A DNA stretch of 64,000 bases from positions 257,140 to 321,139 of the IMG/VR virus record IMGVR_UViG_3300031951_000003; one strand, 5' to 3'. Positions 12,972 through 64,000 of this stretch are shown one piece after another (the stretch's first letter is position 1; each line of letters begins with the position of its first letter). The notes below the pieces were generated by a model that was not told the DNA's origin, ran no database searches, and was given only the letters and a program-made list of their open reading frames with translations. The position numbers and the translations under genes are program-made.

Positions 12972-15393
12972 TTAAATTATCTTTTAAAATTTTTATTCTC
13001 TCCATTATTGAGATTATTCTTTTCTGTTGTTCTTGAAGTGCACCAATACCCAAACTTACCATAAGACCATATTCAACTGATTTAAAGCCCTCCTCGTCTG
13101 TCCAAACAACTTCTGGGACGATATCTTCAATTTGCTGTGCAATAAAACCTATTGTTTCACCAGTAAATGCACTTGGAAGAGATATTGCACGGTTCATTGA
13201 TATTTTAGGATGGTCAACCCATTCGAATCTAACACCCTCAATACCTTTAACTTTTTCTAATACATTTGTTAAGGATTGAATATTATCTTTAAGTCTTTGG
13301 TCTGAAGGTGGACCCTGAGCTCCTTGAGCTCCTTGACCTCCTGTTGGACCAGTTCCACCCTGAGGACCTGTAGGTCCTACGTTACCTTGAGCACCTTGAC
13401 CACCTTGGCCCCCACCTGAACCTGTAGCACCTTGGGCACCTTGACCCCCTTGACCACCACCCGAGCCTTGAGCCCCTTGGGCTCCCGTAGCTCCTGGTCC
13501 TCCACCAGGCCCCACTGCTCCTTGGGCACCTTGTCCTCCTGTTCCTCCTGTAGGTCCTGTTGGTCCCTGTGCTCCTTGGAATCCTGTTGCACCTCCCCCT
13601 CCTGTTCCACCTTGAGCCCCAACAGGACCCTGAGCGCCTTGAGCTCCCTGAGCACCACCCTGTGCTCCTTGAGCACCTGTGGAACCACCTCCACCTTGGC
13701 TTCCTTGAGCACCTGTAGTTCCACCTTGAGCTCCTTGAGCACCTGTTGGTCCTTGAGCACCTTGGTTACCTTGTGCACCTTGGTTACCACCTTGAGCTCC
13801 TTGGGCTCCTTGTGAACCTTGGACACCAGGAGCACCTTGTGCACCCGTATTTCCTCCTTGGGCTCCTTGAGCTCCTTGTGAACCTTGGACACCAGGAGCA
13901 CCTTGTGCACCTGTTGAAGCTCCTTGAGCTCCCTGAGCCCCTTGAGAGCCCTGAACACCAGGAGCTCCCTGTGCTCCCGTTGAACCACCTTGAGCTCCTT
14001 GGGCTCCTTGGGCACCCTGATTACCTGTCGCACCTTGGGCACCTGTTGAACCACCTTGAGCACCCTGTGAACCTTGTGCCCCTTGTGCTCCAGTATTACC
14101 TTGAGCTCCTGTATTGGCTCCTTGTGCTCCTTGAGCACCTTGTGGTCCTTGTGCACCTTGGTTTCCTTGTGCACCTGTATTGGCTCCTTGTGCTCCTTGA
14201 GAGCCTTGAGCTCCTTGAGCACCTGTATTACCTTGAGCTCCTGTATTGGCTCCTTGTGCACCTTGAGCACCTTGTGGTCCTTGTGCACCTTGGTTTCCTT
14301 GTGCACCTGTTGAAGCACCCTGTGCACCTTGCGCTCCCTGTCCTCCTTGTGAGCCTTGACCACCTTGAGCACCTGTTGTTCCTCCTTGGGCTCCTTGTGC
14401 TCCTGTTCCACCTTGAGCTCCTTGACCTCCTTGTGCCCCCGTGGTTCCCCCTTGGGCTCCTTGAGCACCCTGTCCTCCTTGTGAACCTTGAGCTCCTTGG
14501 GCTCCTGTTGTTCCTCCTTGTGCTCCTTGAGAACCTTGTGCACCTTGTGCTCCAGTTGAACCCTGAGCACCTGTTGTTCCTCCTTGAGCTCCTTGAGCTC
14601 CTTGTCCTCCTTGTGCCCCCTGTGCACCCTGAGCACCTGTTGTTCCTCCTTGGGCTCCTTGTGCACCTTGTCCTCCTTGGGCTCCTTGTGCACCCTGAGC
14701 ACCTGTATTAGCTCCCTGAGCTCCTTGTGAACCCTGTCCTCCTTGTGCTCCTTGAGCTCCTTGAGCACCAATTGTTCCACCTTGAGCACCTTGAGCACCT
14801 TGTCCTCCTTGTGCACCTTGTGAACCCTGAGCACCTGTGTTAGCTCCTTGAGCACCTTGAGCTCCTTGACCACCTTGAGCTCCTTGACCACCTTGAGCTC
14901 CCGTATCCGCTCCTTGAGCTCCCTGTGCTCCCTGTCCACCCGTAGCACCTTGAGCTCCTTGAGGTCCTATCGAACCTTGTGAACCTTGAGCACCTACATT
15001 TCCTATTGCTCCCTTAGCACCTTGAGAACCTTGCGCTCCTTGAGCACCTATTGACCCCTGAGAGCCTGTAGTTCCTGAAGCACCTTGTGCTCCTTGAGCA
15101 CCGGTAAATCCAGATATACCCTCAGCAGGTCCTACCCATTCGCCAACTTCATTAATCATTTCTATACCACCCACATACAATCCATATATTCCTCCGGTGA
15201 CCTTTGCACCATCAACGAGTAATTCAGCTCCGATAGTTGCTATGTTACTTTTTGTTGTTGATGAAACTTGGATATTTCCAGAACCATTAACAGATAATTG
15301 TATTTTGTCCGCGGATGAAATCCCTTCAAATTCCATATGAGGGTTAGGGTTTCCACCACTTTTACCATTGGGATATATTATAACGTCAGACAT
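12964..15393 (-). CDS. Collagen-like fibre chain B with periodic insertions and S74 chaperone
   Basis: 195 Gly units (aa 92-696), including 20 four-residue units, then SDQRLKDNI...IGFIAQQ...PEVV. Confidence 0.9.
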
Positions 15394-51079: not shown

Positions 51080-52420
51080 TTATGAACATCCACCACAATC
51101 TACGCTATCAGTGCAAATAGTTACACTACTACAAGGTTGAATTGATGTAACCCCACCTGAAAAATCACCCGACCCAGCTCGGATGCACCTTTCGACTTTT
51201 GAACCTGCAGAAAGTGGTTCACCAACTACTGAACCATCACATAAAGTATATTGTATTGTTGAACCCACAACATCTTGATTTTCAAAGTAATAACACAAAC
51301 ATGGACAAACATAAGTTCCACAAGAGCTTATATCATCGAAATTAGTTATTGCCACTACAACACCATTTAAGATTTCCATAACATAAAGTGGTGGTGACGA
51401 TATATCAGGATTTGCTGGATACGTAGATGGTCCGTATACATATTTTCCTGTAAGAGTTGTGTTTACAAAAAATATTCCAAAAAGATTATAATATAATTGA
51501 CTGCCAGGTCCTAAAGTAGTTGAAGAATTGTAATAATACCCTGCGTTTCCATCTACCTCAACTAATGGGTCGAAAGCTTCTATAAAATCACATTTCACTT
51601 CTTCTTTTGTTTTTGATGTCCAATTTATTTCTGACCCACATATAGTTGCCCCATATGATAAAAGAAACTCAACAAATGAAGGTGTAACCGTTGGCGTTTG
51701 TGAAGGGGTTTCTGTTTGGGTAGGAGTTTGAGGAGGTGTTTCAGATTGGGTAGGAGTTTGGGTTTGGGATGGAGTTTGAGTTTGTGTTGGTGTCGATGGA
51801 ACACAAAGTGAAAAAGATACTATTTTACCTTGGGAATCAATTACCACTTGATATAATGTTCCTCCGAAAGAAATGATATATGTGTTCCCACCCCCATTCA
51901 AAGGGTTATATAATACCCCGTTTAGAAGTGTTTGGTAAATTGTGGCACCTACAACAGGGACTAAATTTGCCTCTGAAATGTATGTATAATAACCTGTTAG
52001 ATTGAGTGGTGATGAACAACTATCAGCTGTCGGGTGAAAAACAACAAGAGGTGTTGCGGTTGGTGTTGATGATATAGTTGCTGTATTCGAGGTAGTGGGT
52101 GAATTTGTTGGTGTCATGGATGGCGTTTGGGTTGGTGACAAGGTAGGTGAATACGACGGGGTTGGTGTCATGGTTGGGGTTTTAGTGACATTTGGTGTTG
52201 GTGTGGGAGTTATATCTATAGGAATCTCATCAATACAACCTTGGGTATCTTCAATTTTAATAACAATTGTTGATTCACTATATGGTGATGGGACATAGAA
52301 TGAGAATGGAAATGTTGCAACCGACGCAACAAATTGACAGTCGCCACCACCCGAGTTACAATAATATATGTCAACTGGTGTATTTGCAGTTACAGATTGG
52401 ATAGTTACAAATTGACTCAT
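51080..52420 (-). CDS. Pro/Thr-repeat Cys-rich virion protein
   Basis: Start moved to MSQFVTIQ; PT linkers between Cys-containing domains. Confidence 0.7.
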   Translation of the reverse strand: MSQFVTIQSVTANTPVDIYYCNSGGGDCQFVASVATFPFSFYVPSPYSESTIVIKIEDTQGCIDEIPIDITPTPTPNVTKTPTMTPTPSYSPTLSPTQTPSMTPTNSPTTSNTATISSTPTATPLVVFHPTADSCSSPLNLTGYYTYISEANLVPVVGATIYQTLLNGVLYNPLNGGGNTYIISFGGTLYQVVIDSQGKIVSFSLCVPSTPTQTQTPSQTQTPTQSETPPQTPTQTETPSQTPTVTPSFVEFLLSYGATICGSEINWTSKTKEEVKCDFIEAFDPLVEVDGNAGYYYNSSTTLGPGSQLYYNLFGIFFVNTTLTGKYVYGPSTYPANPDISSPPLYVMEILNGVVVAITNFDDISSCGTYVCPCLCYYFENQDVVGSTIQYTLCDGSVVGEPLSAGSKVERCIRAGSGDFSGGVTSIQPCSSVTICTDSVDCGGCS

Positions 52421-52635
52421 GCTACATAAGTTACTCCTGAGATTATGCAATTCTGCGAATCAATTACTTTCAACATGTAAGCCAGTCCAGTATCATATGG
52501 TTGTGGTATATCAAAATCATATGGAAGAGTTGTTATAGTATTAATATAAAAGCAACCACTACCGTTTGGTTGACAGATATAAATGTCAAATGGTGATTGT
52601 CCTGTTATACCATTTATTGTAACTTGAACTGCCAT
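52417..52635 (-). CDS. Small paralog of the N-terminal domain of 51080-52420
   Basis: P.DIY.C...G..C......T.P..F..P.PY......IK..D...CI is shared. Confidence 0.7.
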   Translation of the reverse strand: MAVQVTINGITGQSPFDIYICQPNGSGCFYINTITTLPYDFDIPQPYDTGLAYMLKVIDSQNCIISGVTYVA

Positions 52636-52636
52636 C

Positions 52637-55600
52637 TTATGTTGTTCGTTTTATAAAAATTTTATACAAAGTTCCTGTCACTGATGGGAAAACAATTGTG
52701 TAACATCCTACAAGAGGTTTGTAATTGAATGGTGGATTTGTAAGTTGAACTGAATTCAACACGAAACCGCCATACTTGTTACATTCAACAACTTTTGTTG
52801 TTTGTGAGTTACCTGAAAGGAGATACCAAGTTCCACTGACATCAACAAACCCACATTGTGCACCGTAACGAATGTATTGTCCGAATTCATTACCAATATC
52901 AAACGGAAGGGTGGTTAGGTTAATTTCATCAGGTGTGCTAGATAAGACGAAGTTCATATTATAAGTTCCGTCTCCATTATTTTCCAAACTTACATTCAAA
53001 TAAACCTCAACTTCATCAACACTACTCAAACACGTATCACAACTCAAATAGGTTTTATCAGGTGCTGAAGCAAAGTAATCTCCATCGAATCTTTGTGAGG
53101 TTGCAATTTTGATAGGTGCAAAATAATTACAATCAAATTCACCCTCATAGGTCCAACAATTTCCATCAGCATCTTTAAATTGTCTTCCAACTGTAGTCTG
53201 TATTGGTGATTGTTGTGTTTGAATCATATATGTTCTGACTGTATTTGGACTAATTGGAATACAACTTGAATAAACATATACCAAACAAGGGGTTTCACTT
53301 GGCGTTGGGGTCATCGTTGAAGTAGGACTATAAGACGGTGTTTGTGATGGAGTCTGAGTTTGGGTTGGCGTTGATGAATAACTTGGCCTTGGTGTTGCTG
53401 TTGGTGTAAGACCAGGAGTTGTTGTCTGTGTTGGAGTTGGCGTGAATGTAGGAGTCGAGGACGAAGTTTGTGTCGGCGTAATTGTCATCGTTGGTGTTGA
53501 TGTAGGTGTTGATGTTATCGTCGTTGAAGGTGATGGTGAAGGGACTGTTGAACATTTCGAACAATCGTTTCCAAAAATATCAATTATCGAGTCTACGTTC
53601 GTGTTAGATGATAAGTTTGAATCATCCCTCAAATACTTCAAGCAAAGAATTGTTTCATTAATAACCGCCGAGAATACCATCTCAGTTTGGATTGGAATTT
53701 CCTCAAACACAAGTGGGTCAGAAGTGTAGAAATAATTTTCAGTTCCACATTGATTCAATACCTTAACCGAAACACAACTGAATGTTTCTTCAAATATATT
53801 GAAGGTAACTTGTCCATCCGCAGGAACTGTTCTTGTCAGTGTTATCGTTGGTGTGTTTGAAGGGGTTGGGGTTGAATCAGGAACATAATTAATCTCAAAG
53901 TCGACACTTTTCCCAAGACATATCAATCCTGTTGGTGATGGAGTTGGCGTTACACCTATGGAAGTGAAAATGAAATTCACATCGTCACAAGGAACTGACG
54001 GACTTGGTGTTGGGACTGGTTCCCAATCACAGTCAAAGTATGCATTGAAATCGAAGGTGTCACAATTTATTGGCGTTGGAGTTGGAGTTGGACAAACTCC
54101 TGGTTCAAAAGAACCGAAAGATATATCAGGACACGCAGAGTAACATGGAGACGAGCCCTTCAATAAACAAGTCCCACCGAGAGAGGTGCTCAGACACCAA
54201 TAACTCTCAGTAACTGATGTAAAATAATAAATGTAACCCAAGCTGACGCTTCCACCAGAATAGGAGATTCTACCATTATAAGTTGCACCTGAAACGTAAA
54301 GTCCATTGTAATTCAACAAAGAAGGTAGGGTTGTAGTAAAGCAAAATTCACCCGAATCACAAGCCGCTGGTGTCGAAGATACTGTCGGAGTGTTTGTTGG
54401 TGTTGAATACGGGGTTGGCGTTGGTGTGTTCAATAGACAAGCTCTACAACTACCCCAATCAGGTGCACCCAAATCAGGTCCACCAGGACCTGAAAACTCT
54501 TCGAATCTATAACATCTATTGTTATATTCATAAACCGCTCCTTGATAAGCGGTATCTTCATCAACATTGGCATAAAATATTTCTTCAGTGGAACAGTCAA
54601 TCAATAATGCAGCAACACTCGCAACTCTTGGACAAAGTGTAGAACCGCAACCTGTTACATTTGTAAATGTAACCGATGTTCCATCATATATTGGACCACT
54701 TCCCGAATCAACAACTGTCGCACATCCTTCATATTCTGTAGAACCTGTGATAAGATAGACATCGTCAACCACAACTGCAACTGGTAAATCCTCAAATCTG
54801 AATAAAGTCCCTGAAACACAATCACGGAACCCTATTAGGTTTTGTGTCGGTGTTTGAGTGTTAGTTGGGGTATTAGATGGCGTTTGAGTTGGGTCTGGAG
54901 TTACAGAAGGTGTCTGTGTCGGAGTTTCGGTTTGAGTTTGGGTTGGTGTTACATCAGGGGTTGGTGATAGAGTCTGTGAAGGCGTCTGAGTTGGAGTTTC
55001 TGAAGGTGTTTGTGTAGGAGTCTCAGTTGCTGTAGGGGATGAACCAATAGTTGATGTAGGGGTCTGAGTTGGGGTTTCGGATGGTGTTTGTGTAGGAGTT
55101 TCTGAAGGCGTTTGAGTAATAGTCTCAGTTGGTGTTTGTGTGGGAGTTTCGGTTATTGTAGGAGTCTGAGTTGGGGTTTCAGAAGGTGTTTGAGTAGGGG
55201 TTTCAGATGGTGTTTGTGTAGGTGTTTCTGTTGCTGTAGGTGACGAACCTATAGTTGCGGTTGTTGTTGGTGTAGGCGTTTCGGTTGGAGTTTCAGTTGG
55301 AGTTTCAGTTGTTGTCGGTGTAGGTGTTGGAGTACCACAACAATCTACAAATGTATCCGTAGCATAAGACGATACTGGAAAGTAAGCGACATTGTTTTTA
55401 TAATAATAAGTCGACTGAACGTAATTTGCACAAAATGAATCGTCGAAAGTTCCTGCGTCAGCAAAACTTGCCGTGGTCAGTATATTATAACAATTGTAAT
55501 AGTCTACGAATATAGTGTTGTTTAGTGACGAAGGTGTATTACCCGTGGCATCATCCAAGTCAGGTTGTGCAATTGTAACATCAAAATATGTACAATTACA

Positions 55601-56938
55601 AGGAGTTGAAGGGGTTGGAGTTTGTGTTTGAGTTGGCGTAGGAGAAGGGACTACACCACAATCTCCATCAACCACACAAGTTCCTCCCAAAGATGTCCAA
55701 GTATATAAAGGCTCAGGTCCTCCTGCACAGGTAGTTCCCGATGAAACAAGTTTTAATCCTTGTGTTCCACCCGATATACAAATATATCTACTTGATGTCA
55801 CATCAACTTGAACACATTCCTCATTTCCATTACACGCGTAGTATCTGATTGAAATATCTACAATATCATTGTTAGTGATTTCCCAACATTCGCAATCACC
55901 AGGTGGTGTTAGGGTAGGTGTTGGGGTAGGTGTTGTAGTTGGCGTCTCAGTAAGAGTTGGTGTCGGTGTTTGTGATGGGCTTACAAAACAAGGACCAACA
56001 ACGGTCAAAATTGCAGATGGACCGCTTATAACGGTTCCAGCCAGTGCACAAAAAACATCAGTATTACCGTTGGTTATTGTGGCGTTTTGGGGTACAGAAT
56101 CACAATCAGTGTAAGAATAAGGTTCTGAAATAGGCCCTGAAAAACCTAAATATAATGAATATTGAACACAACCTGTCTGTGGTGTTGGGGTAGGTGTTTG
56201 TGTTTGTGTTTGCGAGATTGCTGGAGCTGGAGGGTCTGGGTCCGTTGGAGTAGGGGTTGGAGTTTCTGTTGGCGTTTCTGTTACAGTTGGAGTTGGTGTA
56301 GGGGTAGGAGTTTCGGTCGGAGTTTCTGTTGGAGTTGAAGAAACTACAGGCCCTACTGAACAAAGTTCTTGATTGTTTAGAATCCCATTACTTCCACTTA
56401 TTTCCCAAGAATAGATTCCGTTAGAATAATATCCGTCAGGCGCAAATGTTGTAAGACCTGAGTCAGAATATAAAGTACTACCACTCCAAAGTCCTTCTAC
56501 TGATGAGGTGTAATAACCTGTACCACCTGTAGATGCAAAATCAGAACAAGCAGACGGACCACTTATGACTGAGTATGAAACCAAAAAGGTGTTTGCACCT
56601 AATGGACCACAAAAATTGTCGTATATTGATATTCCTATTTCAGTAATCCCGTCGTAAATTACGTTGGGAAAAGATTGAGTTGCCGAGCCGCCAGCACCCG
56701 CATCAAAATTTTGTTTTCTACCAGTACTATCTGTAACCTCGATACAACCATTCAACAACCCATTACTCCAATATACAGTAAGAGTGTACTCACCAACTTG
56801 TGTAGTGGTGAATGCACAAGTACTCGAACTTGGCGTACAAGGACATCCCACATCACAAGTTGCTGTAACACCGTTAAAGTCAATTTGACTTATAGTAATT
56901 GTGGGTGGTGACTGATTATAAACAAATATGTTAGACAT
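52637..56938 (-). CDS. Very large Pro/Thr-repeat Cys-rich virion protein
   Basis: 1433 aa with mucin-like TETPTQTPS tracts separating small Cys-rich domains. Confidence 0.75.
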   Translation of the reverse strand: MSNIFVYNQSPPTITISQIDFNGVTATCDVGCPCTPSSSTCAFTTTQVGEYTLTVYWSNGLLNGCIEVTDSTGRKQNFDAGAGGSATQSFPNVIYDGITEIGISIYDNFCGPLGANTFLVSYSVISGPSACSDFASTGGTGYYTSSVEGLWSGSTLYSDSGLTTFAPDGYYSNGIYSWEISGSNGILNNQELCSVGPVVSSTPTETPTETPTPTPTPTVTETPTETPTPTPTDPDPPAPAISQTQTQTPTPTPQTGCVQYSLYLGFSGPISEPYSYTDCDSVPQNATITNGNTDVFCALAGTVISGPSAILTVVGPCFVSPSQTPTPTLTETPTTTPTPTPTLTPPGDCECWEITNNDIVDISIRYYACNGNEECVQVDVTSSRYICISGGTQGLKLVSSGTTCAGGPEPLYTWTSLGGTCVVDGDCGVVPSPTPTQTQTPTPSTPCNCTYFDVTIAQPDLDDATGNTPSSLNNTIFVDYYNCYNILTTASFADAGTFDDSFCANYVQSTYYYKNNVAYFPVSSYATDTFVDCCGTPTPTPTTTETPTETPTETPTPTTTATIGSSPTATETPTQTPSETPTQTPSETPTQTPTITETPTQTPTETITQTPSETPTQTPSETPTQTPTSTIGSSPTATETPTQTPSETPTQTPSQTLSPTPDVTPTQTQTETPTQTPSVTPDPTQTPSNTPTNTQTPTQNLIGFRDCVSGTLFRFEDLPVAVVVDDVYLITGSTEYEGCATVVDSGSGPIYDGTSVTFTNVTGCGSTLCPRVASVAALLIDCSTEEIFYANVDEDTAYQGAVYEYNNRCYRFEEFSGPGGPDLGAPDWGSCRACLLNTPTPTPYSTPTNTPTVSSTPAACDSGEFCFTTTLPSLLNYNGLYVSGATYNGRISYSGGSVSLGYIYYFTSVTESYWCLSTSLGGTCLLKGSSPCYSACPDISFGSFEPGVCPTPTPTPINCDTFDFNAYFDCDWEPVPTPSPSVPCDDVNFIFTSIGVTPTPSPTGLICLGKSVDFEINYVPDSTPTPSNTPTITLTRTVPADGQVTFNIFEETFSCVSVKVLNQCGTENYFYTSDPLVFEEIPIQTEMVFSAVINETILCLKYLRDDSNLSSNTNVDSIIDIFGNDCSKCSTVPSPSPSTTITSTPTSTPTMTITPTQTSSSTPTFTPTPTQTTTPGLTPTATPRPSYSSTPTQTQTPSQTPSYSPTSTMTPTPSETPCLVYVYSSCIPISPNTVRTYMIQTQQSPIQTTVGRQFKDADGNCWTYEGEFDCNYFAPIKIATSQRFDGDYFASAPDKTYLSCDTCLSSVDEVEVYLNVSLENNGDGTYNMNFVLSSTPDEINLTTLPFDIGNEFGQYIRYGAQCGFVDVSGTWYLLSGNSQTTKVVECNKYGGFVLNSVQLTNPPFNYKPLVGCYTIVFPSVTGTLYKIFIKRTT

Positions 56939-57047
56939 GAATTACTTACTTACCTTATAAATAACTTGAACTTTATTTTTTTCACATTCAAAATATAGTT
57001 TGACTAAAAACAATATAAAGGCACGCTCAGCCTATATTTATGATTAT

Positions 57048-57230
57048 ATGAAACTTCTTAAAACGATAAAGAAGATTATTCAAGAGGCTGAAGAACAGTA
57101 TAATACTGCAAGTGAGACTAACACACCACTTGAAGAATTAGATAGACTCGAAAAACACTATCAAGACTCTCTGAAATTGTTACGCTTATACAATTCCAAA
57201 CAGGAAAAACTAAAATCCAAGAAAAAATAA
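57048..57230 (+). CDS. Small helical protein
   Basis: Start moved to MKLLKTIKKIIQEAEE, directly after ATATTTATG. Confidence 0.55.
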   Translation: MKLLKTIKKIIQEAEEQYNTASETNTPLEELDRLEKHYQDSLKLLRLYNSKQEKLKSKKK

Positions 57231-57282: not shown

Positions 57283-58221
57283 ATGAAAGAACCTCTATTA
57301 GACTTACATCTGAGTCATGGATTAGGTGACACTATTTGTGCAACACCTTCTTTAAGGAAACTATATTTTGCTTATGGAAAAAAAATATCAGTATTAACTG
57401 ACCATCCACTAATATTCAAACATAACAAATATGTTGATAAAATCTTTGATACCAAGAACACAAATAGAGATGATTTAGAATCTCAATACGAATTACTCGT
57501 AAGTTTTGCACCAAATTTAGAAAACCGATACGGTTTAGGATTACGTCATAATGTTATGGACATAAGACAATTCCATGCGGCGGGGTTGGGTTTCCAATTA
57601 TTACCCGAGGAATGTGATATGGATTACGTTCCTGATGAGTGGGAGCCAATTGATGGTTTACCTGAAAAGTTTGTTTTGATACATCCCGTAACCTCTTGGG
57701 CTTCGAGAACTTGGCCCGCAGAGAAATGGCAGTTATTAACACGAATGTTAAACGATTACGGTATTCCTGTTGTTTCGATGGGGAAGGCATCGAGTGAGGT
57801 AGGTTTTCACATGGTAGACAAACCTGTTTTCGATTTCCCTATCAAACTTGGTTTGAATTTAATGAATAAAGCAAATGTCCCCCAAACTTGGTGGTTAATG
57901 CAAAAAAGTATTTGCACGGTCACCATGGACTCAGGTATGTTACACTTAGCAGGAACCACAGATGCAAACATCATTCAATTAGGTAGTTCTGTTCATTGGA
58001 AGTTAAGAGCCCCTTTTCGAAACGGTTCTCAAGAATATAAATTTCATTATATTGATGGGGATTGTAAGATAGCATGTGCATCTGACATGAGATATGGTGT
58101 CAAAGAATGGGGTTCAATAAGAGGAATCCCACCTTTAGTTGGATGTTTAGAAGGAAAATCCGAATTTGTTTGTCATCCTAGCGTTCTACAAATTTTCAAT
58201 AAAATATTAACCCTATTATGA
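57283..58221 (+). CDS. GT9-family (ADP-heptose-type) glycosyltransferase
   Basis: HGLGDTICATP, LIHP, KTWP-like RTWP, TMDSGMLHLA, Cys cluster near the C-terminus. Confidence 0.75.
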   Translation: MKEPLLDLHLSHGLGDTICATPSLRKLYFAYGKKISVLTDHPLIFKHNKYVDKIFDTKNTNRDDLESQYELLVSFAPNLENRYGLGLRHNVMDIRQFHAAGLGFQLLPEECDMDYVPDEWEPIDGLPEKFVLIHPVTSWASRTWPAEKWQLLTRMLNDYGIPVVSMGKASSEVGFHMVDKPVFDFPIKLGLNLMNKANVPQTWWLMQKSICTVTMDSGMLHLAGTTDANIIQLGSSVHWKLRAPFRNGSQEYKFHYIDGDCKIACASDMRYGVKEWGSIRGIPPLVGCLEGKSEFVCHPSVLQIFNKILTLL

Positions 58222-61200
58222 GTATAAGATACAACTTTATAGAGGTCGGAACATCAGACTTCATGACTCTAATTCAATCTGCTGATGACCAAACTGTCGG
58301 ACTCAGTATCGAACCCATTTCAGAATATCTCGATAGATTACCTAATAAACCCAAAGTTCAAAAAGTCAATGCGGCTCTTTCTGATACAGACGATACTATT
58401 GAAATATATCATATAGAATCTAAAGATTTAGAAAAATACAATCTTCCCTATTGGATTAGAGGATGTAACTCTGTTAATGGTCCTCATGAATTTACAAAGA
58501 AAAAAATTGGTGATGAAACATATAACAAGTTGGTAAAAATTGATAAAGTCCCAACTATATCTTGGAAAACTTTAATAGAAAAATACAATATAGGTTCAAT
58601 TGATTATTTAAAAATTGACACTGAAGGTCATGAACATATAATTTTAAAAGGGTATCTCGAACAATGTAGACTGAATCATAATCTTTTCGCATCTAAAATT
58701 GAATTCGAATACAATGAAACATCAAATAAAATTGAATTAGATAAAATTATAAATCAATTATCAAATTATAATGTAACTTATTTGGAGGAAGACGTTATAT
58801 TGAACATCAAAACAGAGTCTGAATTTGACAAATCTTATGTCTTATATTCAACCGAAAATTACTTTGATATTGTAACTGAATGTGCAAAATCAATAAGACA
58901 ATTTAGTAAACTACCAATATTGGTTTATTTAATAAATTCAAACAGAACTGTTGAAGTAGAAAATACCAAGACTTTAAATTGGTCTATAGATATCGAACCT
59001 ACTTCAAATAACATGTATATTAAGGAAAGGGACAACTTTTACATAGATAGAAAAAATCCAATAATTTATAAAATTTTATCTCAAAGACCTCTGATTATCA
59101 AAGATGCTTTAGAAAAATATTCAAATATTGTTTGTTATGTTGACAGCGATTCAATCGCAACCCCTAACGTTGATACTATATTTTCATATTATGATGAAAA
59201 TTCATCTCACCCATATTTTGTTGAAGGGATATACGATTTTTTGAAATACGATGGTAGAGGTGGAGGAGGAGGATTCGGAGGTGGAATGGAAACAACTTTG
59301 GAACACGATACCTGTGTCTTGTTTGGTGTTGACCAATCGGTCAGAAAAAACTATAGACAAACAGGATATTTCGTTTCAGGTCAAAATACCATCGAGTTTT
59401 TGGAGGAATGGTATTGGATGTGCTCACACCCAAAAGTCCTGAAAAATGTTAGTCATTATGCTCCGTATAATGAGGAGACTATTTGTAACGTTCTATTATG
59501 GAAATACAATATAGATAAGGGTCTTCCCTATGTCTATGTCAATGGGAGATTAGAAACGGTTGAGAAAATGTATACCCAAGTAGAATATAAAGGAAAGGGT
59601 ATCAGAAACCACATCGGTGAATGGTTAAGAGTTCCTGAAGAAAAAAATCATCTCCTGTTTTTTCATGGTGAAAAAAATCCAAACATGATGAGAGAGATGG
59701 TAGATGAAATCAAAAAATATAACAAGGAAAAACTTAGAATTTTATACTTAGCACCTCACCTTTCAACTGGTGGTATGCCAGCTTACTTATTGAAAAGAAT
59801 CGAAACCCTACAAGAATATTACCCTGAGGTAGAATTATATGTTGTTGAGTATTGTCTTTACTCAACTTGGTATGTGGTTCAAAAAGAAAAAATAAAACAA
59901 ATTATACCCGATAACAGATATTGGACATTAAACACTTTGGGAAATCATAATGATGAAAATTCTCTGAAGTTAATTCAAATTATAAAAGATAATTCAATTG
60001 ATATTGTTCATGTTGACGAAATACTTGAGGGGTTTGATAGTTTCAATCGAGTATCAATAAATGTCTTAAATGCACTTTTTGATAACAACAGAACTTGGAA
60101 AATTGTCGAGACCTGTCATAATATTCATTTTAATCCTGAGAATAGACATTTTCATCCCGACGCTTACGCCTTCTGTTCTCCCCATCATCCGAAGGTTCAA
60201 TTCAAAAATGAAAATTCTTATTATGAATTTTTTGAATACCCTATTGACCGAAAATTTGTTACCGAAGAACAAAAAGAACACGCAAGGTTAAAACTTGGTT
60301 TAGACCTTAATAAAACCCATGTGATAAACGTTGGACTTTGGACTCAAGGAAAAAATCAAGGAGAGGGCATCGAAATCGCAAGATATCTACAAGGTGAAGA
60401 TATAGAGTTTCATTTCATAGGAAATCAAGCATCAAATTTCGAAAGTTATTGGAAACCTCTGATGATGAATTTACCATCAAATGTAAAAATTTGGGGTGAA
60501 AGGAGTGATGTGGATTTGTTTATGAAAGCATCAGACATATTTTTATTTAACTCCACAATTGAATGTAATCCCCTTGTTCTTAGGGAAGCCGCTTCTTATG
60601 GTTTAAAAATTCTTTCTAGAAATCTTACACAATATTATGATATGTTTACACCATACATCACACCAATTGATGATGATTGTGAGAAAACGTCAAACATAAT
60701 TCGTGAGTTAAAATACAATGGAATCTCAAGAGACTATGAAGTTAGTCATGACCAATCTCAGAACTTTGCTTTATCTCATAAAAAGTTTTATGAGAAGTTA
60801 AAAACTATGGATATAAAGATTCAAAAATCATCAAAGAATAATATACAAATTACTCAATATTTTATAAGACAACCTTTTTTAGAAATTAAAGGGGATTCAA
60901 GTTCTAAGTTTTTGGTTCAATTCATTGATGATAAAGGGGTAATTCATTATGAAAATAAAATAGATTCCAACTGTTGGGTAAAACTTAACAGACAATATTT
61001 TACAAATTGGAGAACTAAGGTTTACGAAGAAGAAACACTAATATATGACTCGAAATTAGATTTGAAAGACAAAAGAGTGTTTATAAATTTTGATAGTAAA
61101 TCTTTAGGTGACAACATTGCTTGGGTGCCTTATGTTTTGGAGTTTCAAAAGAAACATAATTGTAAAATTATTCTTTCCACATTTTGGAATAAGTTATTCA

Positions 61201-61907
61201 AAGAAGTTTACCCTGAGATAGAATTCATAGAACCAGGGAATGTTGTAAAAGACATTCATGCACAATACTCCATTGGTTGGTTTTATAATGAAAATATGGA
61301 ACCAGTAATCCCGAATACAATTCCTCTCCAAAAAGCAGCAACAAACATCTTAGGTTTGGAATTTGAAGAAATAAAACCACGAATTAATTTTAACGTTTAT
61401 CGAAGACCTTTTGATGAAAAATATATAAGTATCGCAACCAATTCCACCTCAGGTTTAAAATTTTGGAAAAAAGAATATTGGCAAGAACTAATTGATTACT
61501 TAGTAGATTTAGGTTTCAAAGTAATAAACGTATCAAAAGAAAAAAATGAGTTCAGAAATGTTACACAAATTTCAGATAGTTCAATTGGTAATACCATGAA
61601 TGTAATACATCATAGTGAATTTTTCATAGGTTTATCAAGTGGACTTTCTTGGTTGTCTTGGGCAATGGGTAAACACGTTGTGATGATTAGTAATTTTACT
61701 GAACCCGACCACGAATTTACCACAAACTGCACCCGAATTATAAACAAATCAGTCTGTAATGGATGTTGGAATAACCCCAACTTCAAGTTCGATAAAGGTG
61801 ATTGGGATTGGTGTCCAATTCACAAAGGAACACCAAGACAATTTGAGTGTCACACTTCAATAACACCAAGTATGGTAATAAATCAAATTCAAAATTTATT
61901 GAAATGA
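58218..61907 (+). CDS. Multidomain FkbM methyltransferase / GT-A-like / GT4 / autotransporter-type protein O-heptosyltransferase
   Basis: IEVGT..LKIDTEG (FkbM); YVDSD (DxD); APHLSTGGMP...ECNPLVLREA (GT4); SKSLGDNIAWVPY...CNGCW...WCP...QFEC (TibC/AAH-like). Confidence 0.75.
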   Translation: MSIRYNFIEVGTSDFMTLIQSADDQTVGLSIEPISEYLDRLPNKPKVQKVNAALSDTDDTIEIYHIESKDLEKYNLPYWIRGCNSVNGPHEFTKKKIGDETYNKLVKIDKVPTISWKTLIEKYNIGSIDYLKIDTEGHEHIILKGYLEQCRLNHNLFASKIEFEYNETSNKIELDKIINQLSNYNVTYLEEDVILNIKTESEFDKSYVLYSTENYFDIVTECAKSIRQFSKLPILVYLINSNRTVEVENTKTLNWSIDIEPTSNNMYIKERDNFYIDRKNPIIYKILSQRPLIIKDALEKYSNIVCYVDSDSIATPNVDTIFSYYDENSSHPYFVEGIYDFLKYDGRGGGGGFGGGMETTLEHDTCVLFGVDQSVRKNYRQTGYFVSGQNTIEFLEEWYWMCSHPKVLKNVSHYAPYNEETICNVLLWKYNIDKGLPYVYVNGRLETVEKMYTQVEYKGKGIRNHIGEWLRVPEEKNHLLFFHGEKNPNMMREMVDEIKKYNKEKLRILYLAPHLSTGGMPAYLLKRIETLQEYYPEVELYVVEYCLYSTWYVVQKEKIKQIIPDNRYWTLNTLGNHNDENSLKLIQIIKDNSIDIVHVDEILEGFDSFNRVSINVLNALFDNNRTWKIVETCHNIHFNPENRHFHPDAYAFCSPHHPKVQFKNENSYYEFFEYPIDRKFVTEEQKEHARLKLGLDLNKTHVINVGLWTQGKNQGEGIEIARYLQGEDIEFHFIGNQASNFESYWKPLMMNLPSNVKIWGERSDVDLFMKASDIFLFNSTIECNPLVLREAASYGLKILSRNLTQYYDMFTPYITPIDDDCEKTSNIIRELKYNGISRDYEVSHDQSQNFALSHKKFYEKLKTMDIKIQKSSKNNIQITQYFIRQPFLEIKGDSSSKFLVQFIDDKGVIHYENKIDSNCWVKLNRQYFTNWRTKVYEEETLIYDSKLDLKDKRVFINFDSKSLGDNIAWVPYVLEFQKKHNCKIILSTFWNKLFKEVYPEIEFIEPGNVVKDIHAQYSIGWFYNENMEPVIPNTIPLQKAATNILGLEFEEIKPRINFNVYRRPFDEKYISIATNSTSGLKFWKKEYWQELIDYLVDLGFKVINVSKEKNEFRNVTQISDSSIGNTMNVIHHSEFFIGLSSGLSWLSWAMGKHVVMISNFTEPDHEFTTNCTRIINKSVCNGCWNNPNFKFDKGDWDWCPIHKGTPRQFECHTSITPSMVINQIQNLLK

Positions 61908-62578
61908 GTATAGAAAATTTTATATGGGAACCTAAATGTTACGATGGTTTTAGAGAAACTGTGGAACAAGAAATATTTGTTGACAGGATTTACGAAAGAT
62001 TTTTTGAGGTTGAAGAGGGCGATATTGTTTTCGATATTGGGGCTAGTTTAGGTCCTTTCACATATTCAATATTATCAAAGAATCCTTCTCACGTATTTGC
62101 TTTTGAGCCTAGTTTTGAAGAATTCAAAACTTTGTTATTAAATACAAGACACGGAAATGTAACCGCAATAAATAAAGGTATTTCGAGTTCAATAGGTGAA
62201 TTTAATTTCACTGATGTTTTTGATTTGACTGGTGGTTATAAACTATATTCAACAACATTCTCAAAGGTAATTGAGGATTATAATATTAAAAAAATTGACT
62301 TTCTTAAAACTGATTGTGAATCAGGCGAATATGATATATTCACAATTGAAAATTTGTTTTGGATAAAAAATAATGTCAGAAAAATTGTTGGTGAGTGGCA
62401 CCTTGGCCAGCCTTGGATGAAAGAAAAATTCAGAATTTTTAGAGATGTGTATTTGAGGGTTTTTCCTAACTTTAAAGTAATTTCTTTTGATGGAATTGAT
62501 ATAACTTGGCAAATATGGAATGATAATTTTATCCCTTATTATAACGAAGTAATGATTTATATTGACAATAGTAAATAA
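61904..62578 (+). CDS. FkbM family methyltransferase
   Basis: VFDIGASLG, AFEP, LKTDCESGE; start moved to MSIEN. Confidence 0.85.
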   Translation: MSIENFIWEPKCYDGFRETVEQEIFVDRIYERFFEVEEGDIVFDIGASLGPFTYSILSKNPSHVFAFEPSFEEFKTLLLNTRHGNVTAINKGISSSIGEFNFTDVFDLTGGYKLYSTTFSKVIEDYNIKKIDFLKTDCESGEYDIFTIENLFWIKNNVRKIVGEWHLGQPWMKEKFRIFRDVYLRVFPNFKVISFDGIDITWQIWNDNFIPYYNEVMIYIDNSK

Positions 62579-62620
62579 AAAAAACGCACCCATTTTATTG
62601 AGTGCGTTTTTGTATTTTTT
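62577..62620. terminator. Bidirectional terminator between convergent genes
   Basis: AAAAACGCAC...GTGCGTTTTT flanked by A- and T-runs. Confidence 0.7.
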
Positions 62621-62626
62621 TATTCC

Positions 62627-64000
62627 TTATACTATTGGACGATACTCGAGTAATACTTTTTCTACGTCTTTTCTCTCAGCATTTATCATAAAGAACGCGT
62701 CGATATGAGAACTTTGAGAGTCTATGAAGACTTTATTATCTTCAATTTTGACAACAAAGTGTGTATTAGAAACACCAATTGGTGTTAATGATACCGAAAT
62801 CGATTCCTCTTTTACTAATCCTATCCAATAATGAGGTAATTCTATTACGTTTCCTTGAACTCTACCTCTGAAATAAACACCATGTTCAGGACCCTCCAAC
62901 ACACCATATCTTAATCTCCAACCTTCTTTTGTAGGGTGAGGAATATCGAATGATTTAGAAGCCGCTGTTAATGCTCCTGTTATATTAGTGTCACCAGTCA
63001 CTTTGAGTGTTGAACCATCAAACTGAAGGTTTTGTTCACCATTGATTGTTCCTGCGGTTCCTGTCGCAGTAAGGACATAGTCATTAACGTTGTTGTTGAT
63101 TGTCCCGAGTCCAGAAGAACCTGATGTTCCACTTGTGCCAGAGGAACCTGATGTTCCACTAGTTCCCGAAGAACCTGATGTTCCGCTAGTTCCCGAAGAA
63201 CCTGATGTTCCACTAGTTCCCGAGGAACCTGATGTTCCACTAGTTCCCGAAGAACCTGATGTTCCGCTAGTTCCCGAAGAACCTGATGTTCCACTAGTTC
63301 CCGAAGAACCTGATGTTCCGCTAGTTCCCGAAGAACCTGATGTTCCACTAGTTCCCGAAGAACCTGATGAGCCTGATGTTCCACTTGTTCCAGATGAACC
63401 TGATGTTCCGCTCGAACCTGACGTTCCACTTGTTCCAGAAGAACCTGATGTTCCGCTAGTTCCAGATGAACCTGAACTTCCAGATGAACCTGATGTTCCA
63501 GATGTTCCATTTGTTCCAGAAGTTCCTGACGAACCACTTGAACCAGATGAGCCAGATGTTCCACTTGTTCCAGATGAGCCAGATGTTCCACTTGTTCCAG
63601 ATGAACCTGAACTTCCAGATGAACCTGATGTTCCGCTTGTTCCAGATGTTCCATTTGTTCCAGAAGTTCCTGACGAACCACTTGAACCAGATGAGCCAGA
63701 TGTTCCACTTGTTCCAGATGAGCCAGATGTTCCACTTGTTCCAGATGAACCTGAACTTCCAGATGAACCTGATGTTCCGCTTGTTCCAGATGTTCCATTA
63801 GTTCCAGAAGTTCCTGACGAACCACTTGAACCAGATGAGCCAGATGTTCCACTTGTTCCAGATGAGCCAGATGTTCCACTTGTTCCAGATGAACCTGAAC
63901 TTCCAGATGAACCTGATGTTCCGCTTGTTCCAGATGTTCCATTAGTTCCAGAAGTTCCTGACGAACCACTTGAACCAGATGAGCCAGATGTTCCACTTGT
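62627..64000 (-). CDS. Tail-fibre-like protein with Gly-Thr-Ser/Gly-Ser-Ser repeats (5-prime truncated by the window)
   Basis: Open frame from the window end: (GTS/GSS/GTN)n, then GLGTINNNVNDYVLTATG...KSFDIPHP...LEGPEHGVYFRG. Confidence 0.75.
   Translation of the reverse strand, partial: TSGTSGSSGSSGSSGTSGTNGTSGTSGTSGSSGSSGSSGTSGTSGSSGTSGTSGSSGSSGSSGTSGTNGTSGTSGTSGSSGSSGSSGTSGTSGSSGTSGTSGSSGSSGSSGTSGTNGTSGTSGTSGSSGSSGSSGTSGTSGSSGTSGTSGSSGSSGSSGTSGTNGTSGTSGSSGSSGSSGTSGTSGSSGTSGTSGSSGTSGSSGTSGTSGSSGSSGTSGTSGSSGTSGTSGSSGTSGTSGSSGTSGTSGSSGTSGTSGSSGTSGTSGSSGTSGTSGSSGTSGTSGSSGTSGTSGSSGLGTINNNVNDYVLTATGTAGTINGEQNLQFDGSTLKVTGDTNITGALTAASKSFDIPHPTKEGWRLRYGVLEGPEHGVYFRGRVQGNVIELPHYWIGLVKEESISVSLTPIGVSNTHFVVKIEDNKVFIDSQSSHIDAFFMINAERKDVEKVLLEYRPIV
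63110..64000 (-). repeat. Coding 9-nt-period Gly-X-Ser repeat with higher-order duplications
   Basis: gaacctgatgttcc / gatgttccacttgttcca units repeated. Confidence 0.85.

What the first reader, a model, noticed from the sequence alone, without database searches (positions are those of the whole stretch)
57283..62578. Phage-encoded protein O-glycosylation assembly line with a TibC/AAH-like heptosyltransferase
The 1229-aa protein joins an FkbM methyltransferase, a DxD GT-A-like domain, a GT4 domain and a C-terminal domain with SLGD.IAW.PY and the CxxC...C...C iron-finger pattern of autotransporter heptosyltransferases. Those enzymes glycosylate Ser on repetitive proteins. It is flanked by a GT9 and a second FkbM. 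The cluster lies between the Pro/Thr-rich virion genes and the Gly-Thr-Ser fibre gene, which are obvious Ser/Thr-rich substrates. This suggests methylated glycan decoration of the virion itself rather than host LPS modification.
Basis: partly seen in the sequence, partly recalled or inferred. Interest (0 to 1): 0.7.

Follow-up and report, generated by a model that had tools for sequence, protein, structure and literature searches.

The report
Phage fibre-glycosylation cassette with BAHT domain
A 321-kb T4-type jumbo phage carries a three-gene, soluble sugar-adding cassette whose key enzyme domain belongs to a previously unrecognised branch of the autotransporter heptosyltransferase family that, in phages and bacteria alike, always sits beside Gly-Thr-Ser collagen-like repeat proteins, so it most likely coats the phage's own 2244-residue fibre with methylated sugars.

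Summary
Window 57283-62578 holds three translationally coupled + strand genes. They are a GT9 (312 aa), a 1229-aa fusion of FkbM, a GT-A domain with a DSD motif, GT4 and BAHT, and a second FkbM. The BAHT domain scores 293.6 bits against TIGR04414 (cut-off 200) and E 7.6e-54 against TibC. It keeps Asp110, Thr226, Lys230, Trp305 and all four iron-finger cysteines.

A tree of 124 BAHT domains splits into two clades. The classical clade (AAH, TibC-like) pairs with autotransporters. The clade holding the window, all phage relatives and some bacteria pairs with (Gly-Thr-Ser)n collagen-like proteins: 51 loci have such a neighbour and 7 with adequate flanks do not. Conversely, 19 of 48 viral records chosen only for a GTS repeat encode a BAHT.

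Here the partner is a 2244-aa fibre whose stop codon lies 49 bp beyond the cassette. This supports the fibre as substrate, but only by inference.

Heptose is not established. The adenine-contact Arg286 is Thr, the dodecamer thumb is shortened, and the phage has no ADP-heptose genes. Pro/Thr-rich neighbours are conserved only in close relatives.

Verdict: a new variant of a known kind, of high interest, with no biochemical proof.

The parts
57000..57230 (+). Small 76-aa ORF upstream of the cassette. Function unknown and membership uncertain.
   Evidence: ORF seen. ORFs of 56-76 aa stand at the same place in relatives. Their sequences were not compared.
57283..58221 (+). GT9-family glycosyltransferase, 312 aa. 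It has no beta-barrel and no BAHT signature. Inferred to extend the glycan.
   Evidence: PF01075 at 46.1 bits (cut-off 22). LPS heptosyltransferase equivalogs score far below their cut-offs (32 vs 185 bits). It is 23% identical to the BAHT domain over 164 residues. No hydrophobic segment. Present only in close relatives.
58218..61907 (+). 1229-aa four-domain enzyme: FkbM methyltransferase, GT-A, GT4, BAHT.
   Evidence: More than 2139 homologues of 1037-1914 aa exist, with variable N-terminal modules and a constant GT4+BAHT core.
58278..58766 (+). FkbM-type methyltransferase domain (residues 21-183).
   Evidence: PF05050 at 50.2 bits, cut-off 22.7.
58824..59732 (+). GT-A fold glycosyltransferase domain with an invariant DSD motif (residues about 203-505).
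   Evidence: AF2 model at pLDDT 88.3. Foldseek finds 324 PDB matches at E <= 1e-3 to GT6 and GT24 GT-A enzymes. D126 and D128 are invariant in alignment A3. Atlas feature search points to GT8 / nucleotide-diphospho-sugar transferase clusters.
59745..60857 (+). GT4 (GT-B) glycosyltransferase domain (residues about 510-880; the Pfam hit covers 687-810).
   Evidence: PF00534 at 34.2 bits (cut-off 26.4) and PF13692 at 27.3 bits.
60906..61895 (+). BAHT-type protein O-glycosyltransferase domain (residues 897-1226). It has the catalytic Asp in SLGD and a four-Cys iron finger.
   Evidence: TIGR04414 at 293.6 bits (cut-off 200). TibC 4rb4 at E 7.6e-54. Residue mapping. Placed in the GTS-linked clade.
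61904..62578 (+). Second FkbM methyltransferase. It is 224 aa from ATG 61904; the open frame starts at GTG 61847.
   Evidence: TIGR01444 at 50.4 bits (cut-off 37.7). ATGA overlap with the stop of the upstream gene. The product in relative L003 is 224 aa.
62580..62611 (.). 13-bp-stem hairpin with an A-run on one side and a T-run on the other, between the convergent cassette and fibre genes. It looks like a two-way terminator.
   Evidence: This is a consensus scan only.
62627..64000 (-). C-terminal 457 residues of the 2244-aa (Gly-Thr/Ser-Ser)n collagen-like fibre. The gene continues across the record's 56-bp terminal repeat into the start of the genome. Proposed acceptor.
   Evidence: Pfam Collagen at 145.5 bits. 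Full ORF and sequence. Triplets have X = T/S and Y = S. The C-terminal 120 aa are 40-52% identical to ends of fibre-like proteins of T4-like cyanophages and Flavobacterium phage immuto. PHROG tail-fibre families match.
52637..56938 (-). 1433-aa Cys-rich modular protein with (T/S-P)n and ETPTQTPS linkers, divergent from the cassette. Possible secondary acceptor.
   Evidence: Only phrog_15511 of unknown function matches. Conserved only in close relatives.
51080..52450 (-). 456-aa Thr/Ser/Pro-rich protein of the same family (phrog_15511).
48199..51048 (-). 949-aa Thr/Ser/Pro-rich protein with one SprB repeat.

Best explanation
The three genes form a soluble, cytoplasmic protein O-glycosylation operon of a T4-type jumbo phage.

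Proposed mechanism:
- The C-terminal BAHT-type domain of the 1229-aa enzyme starts the glycan. It transfers a sugar from a host-made nucleotide sugar onto Ser/Thr of the (Gly-Thr/Ser-Ser)n collagen-like region of the 2244-aa fibre encoded next door. ADP-heptose is the donor by homology, but this is unproven.
- The fused GT4 and GT-A domains and the separate GT9 extend the glycan.
- The two FkbM methyltransferases O-methylate it.
- The product would be a densely glycosylated, mucin-like fibre built into the virion. The sugars may be needed to fold or stiffen a proline-free triple helix and would set its surface chemistry.

Shown: the domain identities, conservation of the catalytic residues, the absence of membrane segments, and the conserved gene linkage to GTS-repeat proteins.

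Inferred: the acceptor, the order of steps, the sugars, and the presence of the fibre in the virion.
For: 1. BAHT membership by profile and by TibC alignment. Asp110, Thr226, Lys230, Trp305 and the four Cys are conserved.

2. The tree of 124 non-redundant BAHT domains has a 100* split.
- Clade A (AAH beside AIDA-I, TibC-like, Burkholderia, Bradyrhizobium) has 18 autotransporter-like neighbours and 0 GTS neighbours.
- Clade B (window, viral loci, Mel-JY01, several bacterial MAGs) has 51 GTS neighbours within 5 kb and 7 none with adequate flanks.
- The GTS-versus-AT label needs only 2 changes on the tree.

3. In 34 of 39 assessable non-redundant viral loci the GTS gene is convergent. The median gap is 813 bp and the median length 1194 aa. 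The BAHT proteins are only 50-60% identical and gene order elsewhere differs.

4. In bacterial chromosomes the partner is a small signal-peptide or lipobox protein with a (GTS)n tail. It sits in other orientations, so the linkage survived rearrangement.

5. Reciprocal test: 19 of 48 viral records chosen only by a GTS codon pattern hold a TIGR04414 match. Among records at least 60% complete it is 5 of 7. The base rate in the phage database is 4 of 50,697 records.

6. Specificity within this genome: the three other collagen-like fibres are Gly-Ala-Gln type and lie 45 kb away. Only the GTS type abuts the cassette.

7. The cassette proteins have no hydrophobic segment and the genome has no polytopic membrane protein.

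8. The fibre's C-terminal domain is shared with fibre-like proteins in structural clusters of cultured myophages.

9. Precedent: the glycosyltransferase gene sgtA lies next to its collagen-like (GPT)n substrate BclA3 (PMC7157674). Mycobacteriophage virions are glycosylated (Freeman 2023, cited in PMC11256854).
Against: - There is no direct evidence of any glycan.
- Known BAHT acceptors are Ser in beta-helical autotransporter passengers, not collagen-like repeats (PMC4358343).
- Arg286, the adenine contact whose mutation abolished or largely diminished TibC activity, is Thr here. The thumb that builds the dodecamer is shortened.
- No GmhA or HldE homologue was found in the phage.
- The linkage is not obligatory. 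Five assessable viral loci lack a GTS gene within 5 kb. One 98%-complete GTS-bearing record lacks a BAHT.
- The GTS/AT partition is essentially one deep split, so the many loci are not independent events.
- Adjacency could reflect a shared late-gene module rather than enzyme and substrate.
- A structure-based docking test gave no answer.
Confidence: 0.6

Rival explanations
1. The cassette remodels a host envelope glycan (LPS core, O-antigen or capsule) during infection, for example to block superinfection. The neighbouring fibre gene is a coincidence of genome layout.
For: - GT9 is best known from LPS core synthesis.
- Relatives' cassettes carry pyruvyl transferase, sulfotransferase, DegT and PglD-like genes that resemble O-antigen or capsule loci.
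- The genome has a second island with GDP-fucose synthesis genes and fucosyltransferases.
Against: - The genome has no lipid-carrier transferase, flippase, polymerase or ligase candidate, and no polytopic membrane protein.
- The GT9 scores far below every LPS heptosyltransferase cut-off.
- Every characterised member of the BAHT family is a protein O-glycosyltransferase (PMC4358343).
- The GTS linkage also holds in bacterial chromosomes.
Confidence: 0.1
2. The main acceptors are the Pro/Thr-rich modular proteins (1433, 456, 949 and 495 aa) that flank the cassette and the fibre. Their TP/SP linkers are glycosylated as in secreted bacterial enzymes. The GTS fibre is not modified or is a minor target.
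For: - These proteins flank the cassette on both sides.
- The second glycan island of the genome (C1:82-90 kb) also lies about 5 kb from Thr/Pro-rich giants at C1:69.8-76.7 kb.
Against: PT-rich neighbours are seen only in the closest relatives (L012-L022). The GT4+BAHT core is linked to GTS fibres across all viral and bacterial members.
Confidence: 0.12
3. The phage enzyme targets host GTS-repeat surface proteins or lipoproteins, the natural substrates of bacterial clade-B BAHTs, to change the host surface rather than its own particle.
For: Bacterial members of the same clade sit beside secreted or lipobox GTS proteins.
Against: The phage carries its own, much larger GTS protein directly adjacent. 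This holds in 34 of 39 assessable viral loci. The host is unknown, so host GTS proteins cannot be checked.
Confidence: 0.06
4. The BAHT domain is catalytically dead or purely structural, for example a fibre chaperone or assembly factor. Only the other glycosyltransferase domains are active, on an unknown acceptor.
For: Arg286 is lost and the thumb is shortened. A truncated BAHT-like paralogue without the GD motif exists elsewhere in the genome.
Against: Asp110, Lys230 and Trp305 are invariant or nearly so across 76 clade members at 37-70% identity. That is the signature of a maintained active site.
Confidence: 0.07

Closest known systems
TibC / AAH bacterial autotransporter heptosyltransferases (BAHT; PDB 4RAP/4RB4; TIGR04414)
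   Same: The fold family is the same by profile (293.6 bits) and by pairwise alignment (E 7.6e-54). The catalytic Asp110, the phosphate and sugar contacts Thr226, Lys230 and Trp305, and the four-Cys iron finger are all kept. Both are soluble cytoplasmic enzymes encoded next to a long repetitive Ser-rich substrate gene.
   Different: - It falls in a separate clade with 100* support.
- Arg286 (adenine contact) is Thr.
- The thumb region is 19 residues rather than 29.
- It is fused behind FkbM, GT-A and GT4 domains instead of standing alone at about 400 aa.
- Its partner is a (Gly-Thr-Ser)n collagen-like protein, never an autotransporter.
- It is encoded by phages.
SgtA-BclA3 of Clostridioides difficile and BclA of Bacillus anthracis (glycosylated collagen-like exosporium filaments)
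   Same: A glycosyltransferase gene lies next to a collagen-like Gly-X-Thr repeat protein whose Thr (Ser is also accepted) is O-glycosylated. This gives a glycosylated surface filament (PMC7157674, PMC8968730).
   Different: SgtA is a GT-A/TPR O-GlcNAc transferase, not a BAHT. Its repeats are GPT with proline, whereas here they are GTS/GSS without proline. The context is spores, not phage particles.
Mycobacteriophage virion glycosylation (Che8, Rita; Freeman et al. 2023)
   Same: Phage-encoded glycosyltransferases decorate the phage's own structural proteins in the host cytoplasm (cited in PMC11256854).
   Different: The targets there are capsid and tail-tube proteins, and the enzymes are small separate glycosyltransferases. 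There is no BAHT domain, no collagen-like acceptor and no methyltransferase fusion.
Autonomous glycosylation of giant viruses (chloroviruses, Mimivirus fibrils)
   Same: A large viral genome encodes many soluble glycosyltransferases, sugar methyltransferases and nucleotide-sugar enzymes. Here that includes a second island with GMD-like, GDP-fucose-synthase-like, GT10 and GT11 genes, and the target is virion surface proteins (PMC4691112, seen by title and abstract only).
   Different: Those are eukaryotic viruses with unrelated enzymes. This is a T4-type tailed phage (Gp23 capsid at 206 bits).
Microcystis phage Mel-JY01 protein WWT39291 (annotated 'methyltransferase FkbM')
   Same: This is the only cultured phage in the database with the same kind of enzyme: 1226 aa with a C-terminal BAHT at 317 bits. 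It falls in clade B, with an 805-aa GTS ORF 1.7 kb away.
   Different: The BAHT domain is only 41% identical. The domain order differs, with GT4 at the N-terminus. The record itself mis-annotates the GTS gene. No publication was found.

Membership tests
BAHT (TIGR04414, autotransporter strand-loop-strand O-heptosyltransferase) | Profile score above the curated equivalog cut-off | tested here: met
   293.6 bits against a cut-off of 200, residues 897-1226, profile positions 28-373 of 374.
BAHT | Catalytic base Asp110 (TibC numbering) | tested here: met
   SLGD aligns with GTLGD. Asp is present in 75 of 76 clade-B and 48 of 48 clade-A domains.
BAHT | Donor contacts Thr226, Lys230 (beta-phosphate) and Trp305 (heptose O4) | tested here: met
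   All three are conserved in the window. Lys and Trp are invariant in both clades.
BAHT | Arg286, the contact to adenine N1 that gives ADP specificity | tested here: not met
   It is Thr in the window. In clade B it is Thr in 51 and Arg in 10 of 76 domains. In clade A it is Arg in 46 of 48 (role from PMC4358343).
BAHT | Four-cysteine iron finger (Cys339/342/358/370) | tested here: met
   CNGC-x15-C-x11-C aligns column for column. Iron binding itself cannot be tested here.
   The region is 19 residues in the window and in clade B (median) against 29 in clade A. The position of Val266 is deleted in 63 of 76 clade-B domains. The oligomeric state was not tested.
BAHT | Gene pairing with an autotransporter substrate | tested here: not met
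   Clade B has no real autotransporter-like neighbour, against 18 of 48 in clade A. The neighbour is a GTS collagen-like protein instead.
BAHT | Transfer of heptose from ADP-heptose to Ser of a protein | not testable with these tools
   This needs an enzyme assay. The phage has no GmhA (PF13580) or HldE domain II (TIGR02199).
GT9 LPS heptosyltransferases (WaaC/WaaF/WaaQ) | Score above the equivalog cut-offs for heptosyltransferase I, II or III | tested here: not met
   ORF1 scores 32.0 against 185.3, 23.7 against 134.6 and 18.7 against 170.2 bits. Only the broad Pfam family PF01075 is met, at 46.1 against 22.
FkbM methyltransferases | Profile score above the cut-off | tested here: met
   PF05050 at 50.2 against 22.7 for residues 21-183 of the fusion protein. 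TIGR01444 at 50.4 against 37.7 for the third gene. The substrate is untested.
GT-A fold glycosyltransferases with a DxD motif | GT-A fold and a conserved acidic motif after the fourth strand | tested here: met
   Model at pLDDT 88.3 with 324 PDB hits at E <= 1e-3, all GT-A (GT6, GT24), TM 0.45-0.55. The DSD Asp residues are invariant. No CAZy family could be assigned by sequence.
GT4 (Glycos_transf_1) | Profile score above the cut-off | tested here: met
   PF00534 at 34.2 against 26.4 and PF13692 at 27.3 against 27.
Collagen-like triple-helix proteins | Long uninterrupted Gly-X-Y repeats | tested here: met
   PF01391 at 145.5 bits. About 1900 of 2244 residues lie in G-[TS]-S triplets.
Collagen-like triple-helix proteins | Formation of a triple helix | not testable with these tools
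   The repeats have no proline and no charged pairs, so stability without modification is doubtful. This is an inference.

The most novel reading that the evidence does not exclude
Gly-Thr-Ser collagen-like repeats are a previously unrecognised, widespread acceptor class for a distinct branch of the BAHT family. Bacteria use stand-alone enzymes on secreted or lipoprotein GTS tails. Many aquatic tailed phages use multi-domain 'megaenzymes' with swappable tailoring modules (methyl, pyruvyl, extra glycosyltransferases; sulfotransferase and amino-sugar genes alongside in relatives' cassettes) to turn kilobase-long proline-free collagen-like fibres into hypervariable, mucin-like glycan brushes. The sugars may be required for the triple helix to fold at all.
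Probability: 0.45. Interest if true: 0.85.

Novelty: new variant of a known kind. Interest (0 to 1): 0.72.

Why it matters
- Glycosylation of phage particles was reported only recently and for one host group (mycobacteriophages). This finding would extend it to a large, environmentally common set of phages. One search found more than 2139 related proteins, and 122 viral contigs encode a relative.
- It would assign a function to proline-free (GTS)n 'collagen' genes, which are common in viral contigs: 60 of the 80 listed loci from a capped pattern scan held one.
- It would redefine the BAHT family, now named for autotransporters, as having a second and possibly larger branch with another acceptor.
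- The modular enzymes suggest a glycan-level arms race at the phage surface, for example in adsorption, shielding or sticking to mucus or particles.
- The hypothesis can be tested directly, because a cultured phage (Mel-JY01) carries the system and the enzyme-substrate pair can be co-expressed in E. coli.

Tried and rejected
- Complex prediction of the BAHT domain with 60 residues of GTS repeat gave 'no answer' (score 0.00, partner pLDDT 26). It is no evidence either way.
- The first AF2 run of the middle domain, with 6 close homologues, was unusable (pLDDT 52). It was replaced by a 24-sequence alignment.
- Sequence searches of the GT-A and GT4 parts against PDB chains found nothing useful. 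Pfam at E up to 5 found nothing for the GT-A part.
- megablast of the cassette against the phage database gave no match.
- The search for ADP-heptose synthesis genes in the phage (PF13580, TIGR02199) and for NTP_transferase (PF00483) was negative.
- The neighbours of the Mel-JY01 enzyme, including its 'cytidylyltransferase like protein', gave no NCBIfam match, so no heptose pathway could be read there.
- Literature searches found nothing that links these elements. The searches covered phage + TibC/heptosyltransferase, collagen-like + heptosyltransferase, Gly-Thr-Ser + collagen, and Mel-JY01.
- The idea that the Pro/Thr-rich neighbours are the conserved partner was rejected, because they occur only in close relatives.
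- The host could not be identified. The only hints are an SprB repeat, one mis-binned 'Bacteroidetes' MAG fragment and 33% GC.

Full report
**Where the window lies.** The window is the last 64 kb of a 321,139-bp IMG/VR virus record whose ends share 56 bp, so the record is effectively circular or complete. The genome encodes a T4-type major capsid protein (Pfam Gp23, 206.6 bits). It also encodes a large terminase about 30% identical to that of Microcystis phage Mel-JY01, and a weak sheath-like match. It is therefore a jumbo tailed phage, not a giant eukaryotic virus. The host is unknown.

**Check of the observation.** Three + strand genes form a lone island among - strand genes: 57283-58221, 58218-61907 and 61847/61904-62578. 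The genes are joined by ATGA start/stop overlaps at 58218 and 61904. A 13-bp-stem hairpin flanked by A- and T-runs follows at 62580-62611. It faces the stop codon of the convergent fibre gene at 62627.

- Gene 1 is a GT9-family protein (PF01075, 46.1 bits). It falls far below every LPS heptosyltransferase equivalog cut-off.
- Gene 2 (1229 aa) has an FkbM domain at residues 21-183 and a GT4 hit at 687-810. Its residues 897-1226 score 293.6 bits on TIGR04414 (cut-off 200) and E 7.6e-54 on TibC.
- The 'DxD GT-A-like' part of gene 2 has no Pfam or PDB sequence match.
- With a 24-sequence alignment that part folds at pLDDT 88.3. It matches 324 GT-A structures at E <= 1e-3 (GT6 blood-group transferases, alpha-1,3-GalT, the UGGT catalytic domain). 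The DSD aspartates are invariant.
- Gene 3 is a second FkbM.

**BAHT features.** The residue roles come from Yao et al. 2014 (PMC4358343). The window keeps the catalytic Asp110 (in SLGD), Thr226, Lys230, Trp305 and Cys339/342/358/370. Two features differ. Arg286, which contacts adenine N1 and whose mutation abolished or largely diminished TibC activity, is Thr. The stretch that forms the beta-hairpin thumb of the dodecamer is 19 residues instead of 29. The position that sets D,D- versus L,D-heptose preference (Pro300 in TibC, Ser294 in AAH) is Ser.

**Relatives.** A word-indexed search found more than 2139 homologues of the whole protein. Many are 56-81% identical and 1037-1914 aa long, on contigs up to 325 kb.

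- The GT4+BAHT core is constant.
- The N-terminal modules vary: FkbM, class I methyltransferases, pyruvyl transferase PF04230, and the DXD transferases PF04488 and GT25.
- In one relative the cassette also has GT2, DegT and PglD-like genes. A sulfotransferase and five 2OG-Fe(II) oxygenases lie beside it.
- An exhaustive HMMER search with the BAHT domain alone found 762 clusters at E <= 1e-30, mostly inside multi-domain proteins.
- In the curated phage database only 4 of 50,697 records have it: three metagenomic huge phages and the cultured Microcystis phage Mel-JY01.

**The conserved partner.** I fetched 80 viral loci with relatives of the GT4+BAHT core and called ORFs on them. In most loci the enzyme gene is followed, convergently and within 0-4.5 kb, by a very large collagen-like ORF. 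Its triplets are Gly-Thr-Ser, with X = Thr in 55-78% and Y = Ser in 60-90% of triplets. The Pro/Thr-rich neighbours of the window recur only in the closest relatives.

In the window's own genome the downstream gene crosses the record ends. It encodes 2244 residues, about 1900 of them in G-[TS]-S triplets. The genome's three other collagen-like fibres are Gly-Ala-Gln type with Peptidase_S74 chaperone ends, and they lie 45 kb away.

A scan of one genome per prokaryotic species with a BAHT alignment gave 80 loci.

- The closest cellular homologues (37-50% identity) come from Gammaproteobacteria, including an Arenicellales chromosome. Others come from Methylococcales, a Pseudobdellovibrionaceae MAG, an Ignavibacteriaceae MAG and some phage-like 'Bacteroides' MAG contigs.
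- These sit beside GTS or GSS-repeat proteins. In the proteobacteria the partners are small proteins with a signal peptide or lipobox and a (GTS)n tail.
- More distant homologues (33-38% identity; Burkholderia, Paraburkholderia, Bradyrhizobium) are followed on the same strand by ORFs of 800-2600 aa. That is the classical autotransporter arrangement.
- It is also seen for AAH/AIDA-I and a TibC-like pair on E. coli plasmids.

**Tree and counts.** The tree holds 124 non-redundant BAHT domains and was built with IQ-TREE in quick mode. It has one long, fully supported split (100*, length 0.68).

| Group | Rows | GTS neighbour | No GTS, flanks >= 3 kb | Flanks too short | Autotransporter-like neighbour |
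|---|---|---|---|---|---|
| Clade A | 48 | 0 | 14 | 16 | 18 |
| Clade B | 76 | 51 | 7 | 17 | 1 (a tandem BAHT, not an autotransporter) |

- The GTS-versus-AT label needs 2 changes on the tree.
- Among viral rows of clade B, 34 of 39 assessable loci have the GTS gene. It is always on the opposite strand, with a median gap of 813 bp and a median length of 1194 aa.
- Among cellular rows of clade B, 15 have a GTS neighbour and 2 do not.
- Because the labels follow one deep split, these counts are not independent events. What carries weight is that the linkage persists across 37-70% identity, across phage and cellular genomes, and through changes of orientation and gene order.

**Reciprocal test.** Of the 80 loci listed, 60 hold a clear GTS-type collagen ORF. 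Of the 48 whole records of these that could be searched, 19 have a TIGR04414 match and 18 score above the cut-off. Most of these records are fragments. Among those at least 60% complete the figure is 5 of 7. One 98%-complete record has a GTS protein but no BAHT, so the pairing is frequent but not obligatory.

**Soluble, not membrane-linked.** None of the three cassette proteins has a hydrophobic segment. The whole genome has no polytopic membrane protein that could serve as a lipid-carrier transferase, flippase, polymerase or ligase. This fits cytoplasmic protein glycosylation, where phage particles are assembled. It argues against LPS or capsule remodelling.

**Is the fibre a virion part?** There is only indirect evidence.

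- PHROG tail-fibre families match, largely through the repeats.
- The non-repetitive C-terminal 120 residues are 40-52% identical to the ends of proteins of many T4-like cyanophages.
- They also match the 'putative tail fiber-like protein' of Flavobacterium phage immuto, which lies among genes annotated as structural.

**Sugar identity.** Heptose is a homology-based guess. The phage lacks GmhA and HldE homologues and NTP_transferase genes. The Arg286 change is clade-wide. Elsewhere the genome has a second glycan island at C1:82.1-89.9 kb. It holds GMD-like and GDP-fucose-synthase-like genes, GT10, GT11, GT2, a GT2_5+GT4 fusion, FkbM and a TylF-like methyltransferase. The phage therefore invests heavily in methylated, probably fucosylated glycans.

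**Comparison with what is known.**

- The enzyme works like TibC/AAH and passes the profile test. However, it fails three family features: Arg286, the thumb, and the autotransporter partner. I file it as a new branch of the family, not as an autotransporter heptosyltransferase.
- The closest functional analogue is SgtA-BclA3. There a glycosyltransferase gene lies next to a collagen-like (GPT)n protein whose Thr, and also Ser in peptides, it O-glycosylates (PMC7157674).
- Glycosylation is thought to help hydration of bacterial collagen-like helices (PMC8968730).
- Glycosylation of phage particles by phage enzymes is known from mycobacteriophages (Freeman et al. 2023, cited in PMC11256854).
- I found no paper that links BAHT enzymes with collagen-like or GTS repeats or with phages.

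**Verdict.** The fibre-glycosylation idea is now backed by strong comparative evidence. Heptose, the Pro/Thr-rich substrates and the virion location remain inferences. Confidence in the main model is about 0.6.

Noticed in passing
own genome C1:82113-89908 (outside the window; locus L296:2113-9908): A second glycan island lies on one strand. It holds a GT2_5+GT4 fusion (542 aa), GT2, FkbM, GT11, a TylF-like O-methyltransferase, an unknown gene, GT10, a GDP-fucose-synthase-like epimerase and a GMD-like dehydratase. PhoH follows. Thr/Pro-rich giant ORFs lie about 5 kb upstream (C1:69804-76717).
   Followed up: partly
window 10629-18017, - strand: Three tandem collagen-like fibre genes (780, 809 and 874 aa) are of Gly-Ala-Gln type with Peptidase_S74 intramolecular-chaperone ends. 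The region has 46-54% GC in a genome of about 33% GC.
   Followed up: partly
L011:635-3052 (+), Microcystis phage Mel-JY01 PP395634.1: An 805-aa open frame with 149 GTS-type triplets spans a stretch that the GenBank record annotates differently. The record has a minus-strand hypothetical CDS (739-2298) plus a short plus-strand CDS (2519-3052). The fibre gene is probably mis-annotated there.
   Followed up: partly
own genome C1:146701-147351 (L002:1492-2142), with neighbours: A 216-aa protein matches only the N-terminal half of the BAHT profile (35.6 bits) and has NLDE in place of SLGD. It is probably a non-catalytic paralogue. It lies between a 450-aa ORF that was not analysed and a 225-aa ORF that looks like a ClpP protease by eye (not tested).
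   Followed up: no
L099, L101, L111, L116, L104 (bacterial loci): Bacterial clade-B BAHT genes sit beside small signal-peptide or lipobox proteins. In L099 and L101 these end in (GTS/GSS)n followed by a poly-Asp tail. In two gammaproteobacterial loci a DUF6502 gene directly precedes the BAHT gene.
   Followed up: partly
L005:15416-21335 (relative carrying P0058): Next to a related cassette lie a sulfotransferase and five tandem 2OG-Fe(II) oxygenase genes (prolyl-hydroxylase-like families). The window's own genome has three PF13640 genes elsewhere (C1:28772, 152970, 162023). These may hydroxylate structural proteins.
   Followed up: no
window 63945-64000 and genome start: The record's 56-bp terminal repeat lies inside the fibre gene. 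The gene is therefore split by the linear representation of the genome and would be missed or truncated by annotation of the record as it stands.
   Followed up: yes
window 48199-51048, - strand: The 949-aa Thr/Ser/Pro-rich protein carries one SprB repeat (33 bits), a repeat typical of Bacteroidota gliding adhesins. One fragment of a related enzyme is deposited under a 'Bacteroidetes bacterium' MAG. These are weak hints to a Bacteroidota host.
   Followed up: no
L294 (LR756501.1, 735-kb uncultured huge phage): A 738-aa BAHT-containing protein has a 695-aa protein with 35 Thr/Ser-Ser triplets 3.7 kb upstream. A second huge phage (LR756504.1) has a stand-alone 389-aa BAHT with no GTS gene within 12 kb.
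   Followed up: partly
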